This document shows positions 41,022 through 46,611 of a stretch of DNA of 64,000 bases, piece by piece (the stretch's first letter is position 1; each line of letters begins with the position of its first letter). Both the position numbers and the translations under genes were made by a program. The notes below the pieces were generated by a model that saw nothing but the letters and a program-made list of their open reading frames with translations, was not told the origin of the DNA and did no database searches. The DNA lies in the NCBI GenBank assembly GCA_047495785.1, contig JBLDXI010000007.1:1860001-1924000 (forward strand). The letters run 5' to 3'. The DNA is from Lepidodermella squamata. Its lineage: Eukaryota; Animalia; Gastrotricha.

Positions 41022-44000
41022 ATGGTTTACTGCTGCATGGTCTGGGGCTGCCAGAACCGACCTGATCGGGAGGATTGCCGAAGCCGCGGGGTGTCTTTCC
41101 ATCGTCTCCCCGTTTCCGATTTAAACCTGCTCCAAAGCTGGGTCGCTAAGATTGGCGTGACAAATTACCCGTTGTCGCGCAATCTCCGAATCTGTTCCGA
41201 GCATTTTGAACTGGATAATTTTGTCGTTCATAAAGACGGTCGGCGTGTCTTGAAACGAACCGCCGTGCCGTCGCTATTCAACTTCCCGGCCGATAACGTT
41301 CAAGCCATGTTCCCAGCTTTCCCGCTCCACAATTTGTCGACCGATGACTTGCGGGCTTTGAAGGCGGAGCCTACGACGCCTAATTCGATGATTGCGAAAA
41401 TGAGCGCTGCATCGCCTGCAAACTTGTCTATGAAAAATAATAACCACAACGCTAACAACAACAACAACAACAACGGCGAAGAGAACCAGCAGGGATCAGG
41501 ACCTCCATCGACCCGCTGGTCTTTGTTGCCTGATGGCAAGAACATGATCGATTCTCCTTATTCAATTGGCGACGACATGAAGCCGCATGTCCACGAAGAC
41601 CTTCGGCGGTCAGGTGATAATTACGAAGTAAGTTCCGTTTTTTTCTTAATTAACGAAACTACATACTGATAAGTATTTGCGAGTTATACTTAATCACCTC
41701 GAAAAGGACGATTGATCGTTTTTTAGTTCGCCCTACTGTCGTAGGCGCTGTGCGTTTGTCACACTTTTTCGACAGATTTCGGTCATTTTTCTTGTGTGAC
41801 TTCGTGACAATTTCGATAACTGTTACACGTTTGTCTTGAAGTTGGATGTCCGGTCAGGATGACTGCATTTTTCTAGATATATCTCGACATTCGGTGCAAA
41901 GCTGTAACAAAACGAATCATATTACATTGCGATACGGTTGCGTTTTTTTATTGAATTTAACACTTTAATGAAATAATCTACGCTCGGATGCACGTAGCAT
42001 GCGCTATTCCGAAGCGAAAGGTGATGGCGCTGAGGCGAATTCGATTACCTGGGCGTTTTTTTTCCACATCTCGCCTTCGCATGTTTTTCTCGCTACAATG
42101 ACAGATGATGCCACGGCACTCATTATAACGCGCTCACGTGTACGAAAATAGATCAAGACGGCGCTAAATCTCGTAAAAAAACGCCATCCGCAAAATTACT
42201 GCGGTTAAAAAAGATAATAACGCTTGAGGTAAGGCGATAATACAATAATAACAAAAGAGCCCACGTCAGGAAATAAATTCATCGTAGTATGCAATGCCAA
42301 TGTTTTGTGAGGATTCGCAAAACAACTTCCTTTTTTTGCGAAGCCTTTCATATCTACCTTAAATTTGATAAAAGATGCGCTGATTTATGCACTCATCATC
42401 ATCTTGTAATGAGACATCATTGTCGCGTGTGATTAATGTGGAAAAGATGTCTCGGGCGAGATGTAGATGCGCGCAACGAAACTCGCACCTCTTTTGTTCT
42501 CAAAAAGTGCGCCCTGCGTTATATTATTAGTATGCGGTACAACTTGCGATGGGTGCGACCTCTCTCGCGCGGCCAACCAGGTTCCCTCGGCCCAGCCAGC
42601 GTGAAGAAGGCAAGGTGCACTACACGCTACTTGCTATAAACTACCTAGCCGTTATGCGATTATTATTGCCCGCCAATAAATTTATTTACTATGCGTTATA
42701 ATAAATTTTCGCTCAACAGACAGTTACGAGTTATTCGCATAAAAATCCCGCGAATCAGGCGCAATTTCCGTGAAAAGCCCGCGCGCGATGCGACTTGATT
42801 ATCGCGCCTAAATTAATAAAACAGTTCTCTGCTCGACTTCCGCTTACAGTCAATGCACACGCGGTGCCATAAATGCGCGGCATCTACAAAGCGAACGCGC
42901 CAACATTTATTGCGCTCAAGTTTTATGCGTTTCCGTTAACGTCATGTAGTAGTCGTAGTAGGTAAACGATCGTAAAAATTGCCAGCTATAACTGCTTCTA
43001 TTTTCGAAATAACAGCCATTCCTGAAATCTTGTTTACCAACACTTGATTTCTTTACAAGACGCTCTCGCTTATTAATTTCGGTGTCGCATTTTTTACCCG
43101 AGCTACAGTGTCATAAAAACTAGCCGTTAGAAGACCCCTGCGTAATAAAACACCTTCACATGTCTTTATTACTAGCTGGCTGCTTCATTTTTCTTAGAAA
43201 TGAATAGCTTGCACGTGCAGATATCAACTTTCCATGCTTCGCGGCTTGGGACTGCTCACTTTATTTTTAGCTGAAATTGGCGATTTGACGTCGGTGCAGA
43301 CCTGACACTTCTAATCAATTTTCAGTTGTTCGTATTCTACCCGCCACTGCGATTTTTTAAGGCGGATCTATAAACTTCTTATGTTTTCAATAGCCGAGCT
43401 ATTAATGGTGAAAAATGTCGGTATGTGGTGACCAATCTCTTTCACGGGGGCTTTTGATGCTGCCAAAAAAACACGCCACCTCTATTGAAGCATTCACGTG
43501 AGCGCGCGCACTCGTTACTCGTTTGACTCAGCGCCGGTATTGTAGCGCGATAATTTCAACATCGTGCAGTAGTATGATGTTTGATAACCCAATTTACGCT
43601 ATTTTTAGCTAAAAGCGCTAGCTTAGTTCAACTGCTTGTTTTCGCGTTTAAATAAATTTAACGCTGCGTTACAGCAACATGTGACTCAACTTGCATCATT
43701 ACCCCTGAAAAACCACCGACAAATATGGTTATTTTTGTAACCTTGAAAATGAAAAAAGTCATGGCTTTCGTTTCTACTATCAAGCGTTATCTTTTAAAAA
43801 TAACATGGCGCTTAAAGTAAAGCAAGATAACCACAGTCAAAACGGAAGCGAACATGGCAGTTCGAGCGAAATAACAGTCGACTCGCCCCTTTCTGATGTG
43901 AATCACTGCAGTAATATCGGAACCGCGCCTTCACCCCACTCATCGTCGACTGGTGGCCACGGCGGCGGAAGTGGAGTTGCTTCTCGCAAACAGTGGAGCA

Positions 44001-46611
44001 TTGAAGATAAACTGCGATGGATTGGAATGGTCGAAGCGGAAAAACTACCGCGATCGGTTATTTTACGCCGATTTCCTGGCCTCAGCTCAACAACCCTATC
44101 GATGACGCTCCGCCGTAAGAAGTTCATCATAAAACGCGCTTTGACAATGAACGGTGTTCCGACATCACGCAAGCGACTTCGAGCCGGCCAGTTCGAACAG
44201 GTCGAGGAAGAACTCGTTCGTTGGATTAAAACTGACGGCCGCGTGTTGAATGGCGGTGCATTACCGAGACCGGAAATGATCAGGCGGAAAGCTACCGAAA
44301 TCGCGGCCAGGCTTGGGGTTCAGGGCTTTGGCGCTTCGACCGGCTGGCTTCATCGCTTTAAGCAGCGCTACGATTTAGCCTCATCTTTGGTACCTTAAAT
44401 AGGCTTAGAATAATTCGATAATAATATTTTAAAATTAAGCTGGATTTTTTAATAATTTTTTGTAACAATTTTTTCTGATTTTCAGGGCTCTCCAAGTGCT
44501 GCCGAGACGCCTGGCGCTTCGTCGACTGTTTCCGGAAATGGCGGTCACAACGGTCACATGATGGGTGGGGATGATCATCTGCCTTCATCGTCTCCTCTCG
44601 TCGCTGTTTGCAACAACGACGATATGATCGATGGTGAAACTGATGAGGTGAACGTCGACGGGTCTGTTGAGCCTGATGCGAAACGCTACCGGTCATCGCC
44701 GGCCATCAGCGGCGATCAAAACATGCCGGGCAGCGGCTATGCGCGTCACCCGTTGGCGAACGGCGCCCATCATCACCTGTTGAAAATGCATCAGCCGCAT
44801 CATTTGACGCAGATGCGGCGGCCAAGGCAGCGGAAAGCTGTTCTGCCGCGCCAGTCTCGCGCCTCGCCTAACCAACAGGTCGGCGGTATGCCTCAGCCTT
44901 CGCCGCAACCACAGCAGCAGCAGCAGAACCAGCAACAGCTCACGCAACAGCAACAAGCGGCTGCGGCTGCGAATTTTATGAGTCAGCTATTTGGGGGTGC
45001 AAATTTTCTCACTGCTTTTCAGAACCAGGACCGACTCGGTTCAGGTCAGTTTTATTCCTTATAAACCAGTTATATTAGCGAGCGAAATACTAGACATTGA
45101 AAGGGTTAGGATTATAAGTGTCTTACATTTTTTTACACTACATTGTAGTCGTCTGACGAAAAATTTGAGACTTATCCGAATAATGCAGGGTAAGGGAGAA
45201 TCATTTTGGAAGATTCCCGAATATTTCTAAACGAATTTTACAAGATTGAACAAATTTGCATGGCGCCATACTTCAAATTAGTCAGCAAAGTCTTTAATTC
45301 GAAAAGAATGGAATCATGGCTGCAAAACTTGCGCGACTTCCAGGGAACCATTATAAAATGTCCAGATTTTTAGCTGATTTATGACTATGTTTTTGCATGA
45401 TGGCATATTTCGAGATTTCACAAGAAGGAAATAGGAAAATGGTTAGCGAGCTAAGCGAGCAACAATTTTGGGTTGTTACCATGAAAAGTGTCTAAAAATG
45501 CTTGGAAGTTGAGATTGTTGAAATATTTCCAGGTTTTATTAAATTTTGTGTTCTCGAAGCGGTGATCTGAGTGATGACCTTACACTGAAAATCACACAGA
45601 ATTCCATGGTAATTGCTTGGATTTTTTTAATTTATCATGGCATTGCCGGAAATAACGGAAAAGCATATATCGGCGAATGAATTGTTCAAAGATTTTTCCC
45701 CTTCTGGTCGAAGTTCGTTCTGCTTTTAGATTGATTCCCTTGAAATAAATCGATTTCTTTATTTTCGATGGGATTTCTAAAAAATCGTTTATTCTAAGAT
45801 TTGTACTCACCAATCTTTACCTATTATTAGCATAGGCGTAGTAGCCGTGAATTATTTCGGGCTGTCTTTCGATTGGTTGAGGTAGACGAAGTGCCAAAAA
45901 TTAAGCAATTAGGCACTTGGTGACCTTGTTTCAGGATTTCTCTGGGGGTGTTGAAGACCCAAACCTCCTACGCCACTAGTCATATTATTGAGTAATCCCG
46001 ATAATTTCCTACCTTAGCCTAGCTTTTGAAGTACAAATTCTCATTTCTTGGAATTCTTAGACTATTTAGTTTGAGATTTTCCTGGAATTTTTATGTTCTA
46101 ATGAGCTTTCAAAACTGATTAGCCTCATATTAATTGTTGATTTGTGCATTTTTTAGGAACCCCAGTGGCGACTCAACTCGGTGCCGGTGCTCTCGACCTG
46201 TCGGTTCGCAATCTGCCGGTGCCACCCACGCCTCTCCTCTCTATGCCGCCCCCTGGCGTAGCCACCTCATCGCTTCTCAACGCCATGGCGCCTCGCTTCG
46301 GAGCTGGCGGCGACGTAGGCCGGGTTCGTTCACTAATCGCCGGCTATCGAGAATCAGCCTCGTTTCTAACAAAAGCCGCCGATGAACTGGAAACATTCAT
46401 GGCGCAGGTGCAGCAGATCGCCACCAGCAACAACAACAATCAAGTTTCCGCATCCGGCGCTTCGTCGACAGTCAGTTCGACGAGCAGCTCATCGTCATCG
46501 AGCAATAACAATAACAACACGAACTCGCTTTTATCCTCAGCTTTTTTGAATCTTATGCCGTCATTGCCTTCGCTGTCACAGCAACTCGTTCAACAAGCTG
46601 AACTTGCCTAA
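41022..46611 (+). CDS. THAP-domain isoform: exons 41022-41627, 44486-45044, 46157-46611 (THAP + low complexity + ALDLS + NOL4-like C-terminal helix)
   Basis: C2CH THAP signature CMVWGC..FHRLP..W..RICSEHF..AVPSLF (41022-41279). Strong phase-0 donor GAA|GTAAGT at 41628, compatible with phase-0 acceptor TTTTCAG|GGC at 44486. Then a phase-1 intron 45045-46156. The THAP-to-44486 join is inferred. Confidence 0.72.
43805..46611 (+). CDS. CENP-B/pogo double-HTH isoform: exons 43805-44389, 44486-45044, 46157-46611
   Basis: RKQWSIEDKL..LSSTTLS (psq/CENP-B N-type HTH) plus RKRLRAGQFEQVEEELVRW..IRRKATEIA..FGASTGWLHRFKQRY (Tc5/CENP-B HTH). No DDE domain follows. Phase-0 donor TTG|GTACCT at 44390 and a 96-nt intron to 44486. 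Confidence 0.8.
45831..45979. mobile_element. Possible small degraded non-autonomous DNA element in an intron
   Basis: Imperfect termini CATAGGCGTAG ... CTACGCCACTAG. No clear TSD. Confidence 0.25.

What the first reader, a model, noticed from the sequence alone, without database searches (positions are those of the whole stretch)
46189..46392. NOL4-like C-terminal helix plus a CtBP-type ALDLS motif, without the rest of NOL4
Seen: in an otherwise low-complexity last exon, ALDLS (46189-46203) precedes VRSLIAGYRESASFLTKAADELE (46324-46392). From memory this closely resembles the extreme C-terminus of vertebrate NOL4/NOL4L (VRQLxAGYRESAAFLLRSADELE), and ALDLS is a recognised variant of the PxDLS CtBP-binding motif. 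I see no other NOL4 domain in the locus. Inference: the helix is a portable interaction or oligomerisation module that could let THAP and HTH isoforms pair with each other or with NOL4 and recruit CtBP.
Basis: partly seen in the sequence, partly recalled or inferred. Interest (0 to 1): 0.7.

Follow-up and report, generated by a model that had tools for sequence, protein, structure and literature searches.

The report
NOL4 tail on a two-headed gene
The last exon of this small-invertebrate gene encodes the same two-part tail that ends the animal protein NOL4 (a CtBP co-repressor docking motif followed by a conserved helix), but here it is spliced behind either of two unrelated DNA-binding heads, in a genome where I found no ordinary NOL4.

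Summary
ALDLS (46189-46203) and the helix (46324-46392) lie in one last exon (46157-46611).

An exhaustive profile search with the helix gave 235 significant hits, nearly all at the extreme C-terminus. The long ones are NOL4/NOL4L (Pfam HTH_NOL4_2nd).

ALDLS is not a separate addition. Most NOL4 proteins carry G-P-T-D-L-S-[MV]-K a median of 28 residues before the helix, and sea-spider and moth NOL4 genes encode motif plus helix in one terminal phase-1 exon. The window therefore holds the NOL4 terminal-exon module.

Spliced contigs join this exon, through a shared exon, to either a THAP exon or a Tc5/CENP-B HTH exon. No other part of the gene resembles NOL4. Full-length NOL4 queries against the 121-Mb genome hit only this helix and its near-identical second copy.

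ALDLS is an experimentally proven CtBP motif (RAI2, EBNA3A), and the genome has a CtBP orthologue. CtBP binding here and helix pairing remain inferences.

One relative, from a metagenome, has the same layout. The scan had already noted the two-headed gene on another contig of this genome (s1-398015); the NOL4 reading is new here.

The parts
46157..46611 (+). Last exon (includes the stop TAA at 46609-46611); encodes the NOL4-type terminal module plus a low-complexity S/N-rich end
   Evidence: Spliced contig joint 45044->46157, GT..AG, one 878-nt contig across it; splice sites read; frame.
46186..46212 (+). G-A-L-D-L-S-V-R-N: CtBP-type docking motif, counterpart of NOL4 G-P-T-D-L-S-[MV]-K
   Evidence: Identical 9/9 in orthologue P0001 inside otherwise unalignable sequence. 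Aligned under GPTDLS-MK of NOL4. Predicted disordered, pLDDT about 45. ALDLS binds CtBP in RAI2 and EBNA3A.
46321..46398 (+). Conserved core of the NOL4-type helix (RVRSLIAGYRESASFLTKAADELETF)
   Evidence: Profile search: 235 hits, at NOL4/NOL4L C-termini. 12 invariant columns over 52 sequences. Best hit in the whole genome for full-length NOL4 queries.
46309..46434 (+). Full extent of the predicted single alpha-helix (residues 51-92 of window:46159-46446)
   Evidence: AlphaFold2 with a 52-sequence alignment: helix 51-92, 30 residues with pLDDT >=90. Highest helical hydrophobic moment of the exon.
44486..45044 (+). Shared tail exon 1 (disordered, Q-rich; conserved islands KRYRSS 44681-44698 and RRPRQRK 44816-44836); no NOL4 similarity
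   Evidence: Joints 41627->44486 and 44389->44486; translation; NOL4 C-terminal profile score -3.7; islands.
41022..41627 (+). THAP-head exon (isoform A, 539 aa in all), spliced directly to 44486 and skipping the HTH exon
   Evidence: Pfam THAP E 5.4e-16; joint 41627->44486 GT..AG in a 408-nt contig; donor GTAAGT; open frame.
41415..41435 (+). P-A-N-L-S-M-K: second CtBP-like motif, specific to the THAP isoform
   Evidence: Conserved as PHNLSMK in the orthologue within a poorly conserved stretch. Picked up by the NOL4 profile against its PTDLS[MV]K positions.
43805..44389 (+). CENP-B/Tc5-type HTH-head exon (isoform B, 532 aa in all), spliced to 44486
   Evidence: Pfam HTH_Tnp_Tc5 E 7.6e-14; joint 44389->44486 GT..AG, supported by a 33-nt side in one contig; splice sites; unrelated to HTH_NOL4_2nd by hhalign, probability 0.2%.

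Best explanation
The last exon (46157-46611) encodes the terminal module of the NOL4/NOL4L family. It has two parts: a disordered stretch carrying a CtBP-type docking motif (G-ALDLS-VR, counterpart of NOL4 G-PTDLS-MK), and about 40 residues later a roughly 40-residue amphipathic helix (the 'conserved C-terminal coiled-coil' of NOL4).

Here the module is not part of a NOL4 protein. It is the shared 3' end of a gene whose two transcripts begin with either a THAP zinc-finger exon or a CENP-B/Tc5 helix-turn-helix exon.

Shown: homology of the module, the exon structure, both splice forms, absence of any other detectable NOL4 part in the gene and genome, presence of CtBP in the genome, and helix plus disorder in the predicted structure.

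Inferred mechanism: the head selects DNA sites. ALDLSVR (and PANLSMK in the THAP form) docks into the PxDLS cleft of CtBP and brings that co-repressor to the sites. The helix self-associates or binds a further partner, making the complex multivalent. In effect the gene is a NOL4-like co-repressor adaptor with exchangeable DNA-binding heads, and possibly the lineage's replacement for NOL4.
For: - Helix profile versus 1.84e9 proteins: 235 hits at E<=1e-3, the match ending within a few residues of the C-terminus in nearly all full-length hits.
- 35 of 53 hits of >=200 aa carry Pfam HTH_NOL4_2nd, and no family other than Integrase_H2C2 was seen. Sources name them nucleolar protein 4(-like) in fish, horseshoe crab, sea spider and beetle.
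- 75 of 109 NOL4-type hits with enough upstream sequence have [PA]xDL[ST], mostly GPTDLS[MV]K, 18-112 residues (median 28) before the helix. The window linker is 40 residues and that of P0001 is 17. MAFFT aligns the two motifs and the helices co-linearly. Some phmmer alignments span both in one piece.
- Sea-spider and moth NOL4 genes encode motif plus helix in one terminal exon entered in phase 1. The window's last intron is also phase 1.
- Reciprocal test: Limulus and beetle NOL4 searched against the 121-Mb genome hit best at window 46288-46410 and its C32 copy, with only their last ~40 residues.
- Splicing: GT..AG joints 41627->44486, 44389->44486 and 45044->46157, with exon-only coverage in run X1. 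Both frames are open.
- The orthologous locus L001 has the same order THAP, HTH, tail.
- AlphaFold2: one helix, motif region disordered.
- CtBP orthologue in the genome, 300 bits to human CtBP1.
- ALDLS binds CtBP in RAI2 and EBNA3A. The degenerate GLDLSKK of HIC1 is a further precedent.
- NOL4's C-terminal coiled-coil is present in all splice variants, and NOL4 is linked to CtBP-binding LCOR/LCORL.
- Five of six substitutions between the two genomic copies in this exon are synonymous, and the two inside the helix region are both synonymous.
Against: - No binding was measured or predicted. The homodimer prediction gave no verdict, and a CtBP-peptide prediction could not be set up.
- The homologous stretch is short (about 9 + 35 residues).
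- Tail exon 1 and both heads show no NOL4 similarity, so the evolutionary route (exon capture or head replacement) is open.
- Unlike NOL4, the protein continues about 70 residues past the helix.
- The orthologue L001 has no intron before the module, so the phase-1 agreement with NOL4 genes may be coincidence (1 in 3).
- A third of NOL4-type hits lack the PTDLS motif, so the motif is not obligatory in the family.
- The HTH-to-tail joint rests on one contig with a 33-nt side.
- Absence of a canonical NOL4 rests on six-frame, exon-by-exon searches.
- Hits 152-235 of the big search were not listed, so their architectures are unknown.
Confidence: 0.7

Rival explanations
1. Same homology, different use of the helix. 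It is not a self-association (coiled-coil) element but a docking helix for one specific partner, for instance an LCOR/LCORL/E93 (Mblk-1)-type psq-HTH factor. Those are the proteins that mammalian NOL4 binds.
For: Mouse NOL4 and NOL4L bind Mlr1 (LCORL) strongly. Even the shortest variant, NOL4-S-delta, which keeps the C-terminal coiled-coil, still binds Mlr1 (PMC5343783). The invariant G-Y-R-E-S and A-D-E-L-E residues are polar or charged and invariant from fish to this animal. That degree of constancy is more typical of a specific interface than of a generic coiled coil. The homodimer prediction did not reach its mark, but that is no evidence either way.
Against: The review calls the element a coiled-coil. 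The heptad-like spacing of V/L/Y/F/L/L/F/V/I and the high hydrophobic moment fit self-association. Which part of NOL4 binds Mlr1 is not stated in the text I could read. I did not look for an E93/LCOR orthologue in this genome.
Confidence: 0.3
2. The gene is the lineage's true NOL4 orthologue, whose N-terminal integrase-finger and helical domains were replaced in situ by THAP and Tc5 HTH exons. The alternative route is capture of a copy of NOL4's terminal exon by an unrelated THAP/HTH gene.
For: No canonical NOL4 helical domain was found in the genome: PF23079 best 17.6 bits against a cut-off of 26, in an unrelated membrane protein. Full-length NOL4 queries find only this exon. The terminal intron is phase 1, as in two arthropod NOL4 genes.
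Against: Nothing upstream of the last exon resembles NOL4: tail exon 1 scores -3.7 against a NOL4 C-terminal profile, and the HTH exon versus HTH_NOL4_2nd gives probability 0.2%. The intron is 10 codons further from the motif than in NOL4 genes and is absent in the orthologue L001. With only two species sampled the two routes cannot be told apart.
Confidence: 0.35
3. ALDLSVR is conserved for a reason other than CtBP docking, such as another SLiM reader or a modification site, and the tail does not recruit CtBP.
For: No binding data exist. A third of NOL4-type proteins lack the motif. The residue after S is V followed by R, not the commonest xK.
Against: The exact pentapeptide ALDLS binds CtBP with a solved complex, and its mutation abolishes binding in EBNA3A. 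The motif lies in predicted disorder. It is invariant between two species across a diverged linker. It sits where NOL4 has the textbook PxDLSxK. CtBP is present. A second PxNLSMK is conserved in the THAP exon.
Confidence: 0.15
4. The similarity to NOL4 is convergent or due to chance, or the exon really belongs to a conventional full-length NOL4 gene.
For: The shared stretch is short. Amphipathic helices can converge.
Against: E-values are 1e-6 to 1e-9 against 1.84e9 proteins. There are 12 invariant positions, including non-helix-forming G-Y-R-E-S. The two parts come in the same order in one terminal exon. The reciprocal best hit is in the whole genome. Spliced contigs join the exon to THAP and HTH heads, and no NOL4 domain is anywhere in the locus.
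Confidence: 0.03

Closest known systems
NOL4 / NOL4L (nucleolar protein 4 family; Pfam HTH_NOL4_2nd PF23079)
   Same: Terminal module: a G-[PA]-x-D-L-S-x-[KR] motif in a disordered stretch, then AVRQLIxGYRESAxFLxxxADELE in one helix, encoded together in the last exon.
   Different: No HTH_NOL4_2nd domain and no integrase-H2C2-like region. The heads are THAP or Tc5/CENP-B HTH, chosen by alternative first exons. About 70 extra residues follow the helix. Substitutions are Q->S, R->K and S->A (RSLI...KAADELETF). Only about 60% identity over the helix.
RAI2 (retinoic acid-induced 2)
   Same: Disordered protein region carrying the identical ALDLS pentapeptide, shown to dock into CtBP. Multivalency (two motifs) drives CtBP polymerisation (PMC11187106). 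The THAP isoform here also has two CtBP-type motifs.
   Different: RAI2 has no DNA-binding head and no NOL4-type helix. Its two motifs are 21 residues apart, against about 260 here. There is no sequence relationship outside the motif.
HIC1 and EBNA3A (degenerate, non-proline CtBP motifs)
   Same: GLDLSKK (HIC1) and ALDLS/VLDLS (EBNA3A) show that the first position need not be proline. HIC1 is likewise a sequence-specific repressor that brings in CtBP.
   Different: Unrelated proteins (a BTB-zinc finger factor and a viral nuclear antigen) with no NOL4-type helix.
E93 / Mblk-1 / LCOR / LCORL
   Same: HTH (psq-type) DNA-binding proteins with a PLDLS-type CtBP motif. They are the known binding partners of NOL4 (PMC5343783). 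Isoform B here combines a CENP-B/psq-like HTH with a CtBP-type motif in one chain.
   Different: The HTH here scores as Tc5/CENP-B type, not as an E93 RHF domain. I saw no NR box. Orthology was not tested.
Genes with interchangeable DNA-binding exons on a common part (e.g. Drosophila lola, mod(mdg4); from my own knowledge)
   Same: One locus yields factors that share an effector part but differ in DNA-binding domain.
   Different: There the common part is the 5' BTB domain and the variable zinc fingers are at the 3' end. Here the variable heads are 5', of two unrelated folds, and the common part is a 3' co-repressor tail.

Membership tests
NOL4/NOL4L family | HTH_NOL4_2nd helical domain (Pfam PF23079) | tested here: not met
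   Absent from all four exons (E<=1). hhalign of the HTH exon against the domain gives probability 0.2%. The genome-wide best is 17.6 bits against a cut-off of 26, in an unrelated membrane protein.
NOL4/NOL4L family | N-terminal integrase-H2C2-like zinc-binding region | tested here: not met
   No such Pfam hit in the locus. A Limulus NOL4 query gives only weak 17.8-bit hits to three other contigs, probably retroelement integrases.
NOL4/NOL4L family | C-terminal helix AVRQLI[AT]GYRESAAFLLRSADELE | tested here: met
   43 bits and E 1.5e-14 against a NOL4 C-terminal profile, with 12 columns invariant over 52 sequences.
NOL4/NOL4L family | PxDLSxK motif 18-112 residues before the helix (present in about 70% of members) | tested here: met
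   G-ALDLS-VR lies 40 residues before the helix and aligns under GPTDLS-MK.
NOL4/NOL4L family | Protein ends within about 10 residues after the helix | tested here: not met
   About 70 residues follow here and about 45 in P0001.
NOL4/NOL4L family | Motif and helix in one terminal exon entered by a phase-1 intron 1-2 codons before the motif | tested here: inconclusive
   Same content and same phase, but the intron lies 10 codons further upstream. It is absent in orthologue L001. Only two NOL4 genes were examined.
CtBP-recruiting repressors (PxDLS short linear motif) | Motif matching a validated CtBP-binding sequence | tested here: met
   ALDLS is identical to the RAI2 and EBNA3A sites. The following x-R fits PxDLSx[KR].
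CtBP-recruiting repressors (PxDLS short linear motif) | Motif lies in a disordered region and is conserved among orthologues | tested here: met
   pLDDT 43-46 over residues 1-20. 9/9 identical in P0001 next to a 23-residue indel.
CtBP-recruiting repressors (PxDLS short linear motif) | CtBP present in the same organism | tested here: met
   G000 C21:2620821-2621366(-): 300 bits to CtBP1/2 against 119 bits for the next dehydrogenase family. The N-terminal exons were recognised by eye.
CtBP-recruiting repressors (PxDLS short linear motif) | Physical binding to CtBP and CtBP-dependent repression | not testable with these tools
   CtBP's cleft-forming domain is split over at least 3 exons and joined sequences were not to be submitted, so no complex prediction was run.
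THAP-domain / CENP-B-type HTH DNA-binding proteins (the heads) | Pfam THAP (C2CH) and HTH_Tnp_Tc5 above the curated cut-off | tested here: met
   THAP 59.6 bits (cut-off 23.9); HTH_Tnp_Tc5 51.9 bits (cut-off 22.2). No transposase catalytic domain in the locus.

The most novel reading that the evidence does not exclude
The terminal exon of NOL4 is an autonomous, transferable co-repressor cassette (CtBP dock plus pairing helix). It carries the conserved function of this poorly understood family. In this lineage it was detached from NOL4's own domains and now serves two alternative, transposase-derived DNA-binding heads in a genome that has lost canonical NOL4. Helix-mediated pairing would then give THAP/THAP, HTH/HTH and THAP/HTH dimers with composite DNA specificity and two to four CtBP docks, enough to polymerise CtBP tetramers as RAI2 does.
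Probability: 0.25. Interest if true: 0.75.

Novelty: new variant of a known kind. Interest (0 to 1): 0.58.

Why it matters
NOL4/NOL4L are conserved across animals and recur in leukaemia fusions and as cancer-testis antigens, yet their molecular function is still described only vaguely in the papers I could read.

This locus is a natural deletion experiment. One lineage keeps only the roughly 80-residue terminal module and puts it behind other DNA-binding domains. That points to the module (a PxDLS-type CtBP dock plus the invariant GYRES...ADELE helix) as the functional core.

It gives a directly testable prediction for NOL4 itself: that it is a CtBP adaptor acting through GPTDLSMK. I found no paper stating this in the library searched.

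It is also a clear example of exon-level modularity, with two unrelated transposase-derived heads alternating on one co-repressor tail.

Tried and rejected
- Complex prediction: homodimer of the helix, residues 44-96 of window:46159-46446, two copies. No verdict (score 0.11, mark 0.32). It counts neither for nor against pairing.
- CtBP-peptide complex: not run. The cleft-forming N-terminal domain of this genome's CtBP is split over at least 3 exons and joined sequences were not to be submitted.
- Joined isoforms: built only inside a script, to check length and open frame. They were never sent to any search or fold; all searches were exon by exon.
- Word-index searches: the last exon, P0001 region 160-225 and the THAP exon found only the one metagenome relative. 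NOL4 was missed despite the suitable length range. Only the exhaustive HMMER search found it.
- JGI metagenome scan with the helix: 190 pattern matches, none confirmed.
- Exact look-up of ten window ORFs to learn the organism: none on record. The organism stays unidentified by me.
- PDB and Pfam on the last exon: nothing meaningful.
- 'E.DAKRYR' in tail exon 1 versus NOL4 'E..NAKRMR': not supported by the profile.
- HTH exon as a diverged NOL4 helical domain: rejected.
- PF23079 hit L004: an unrelated multi-pass membrane protein.
- The C32 copy: about 97-98% identical through intron and UTR, so it is an allelic or homeologous copy and not independent evidence.
- Unnamed vertebrate-type NOL4 fragments among the hits were used only as protein rows; none of their contigs was fetched.
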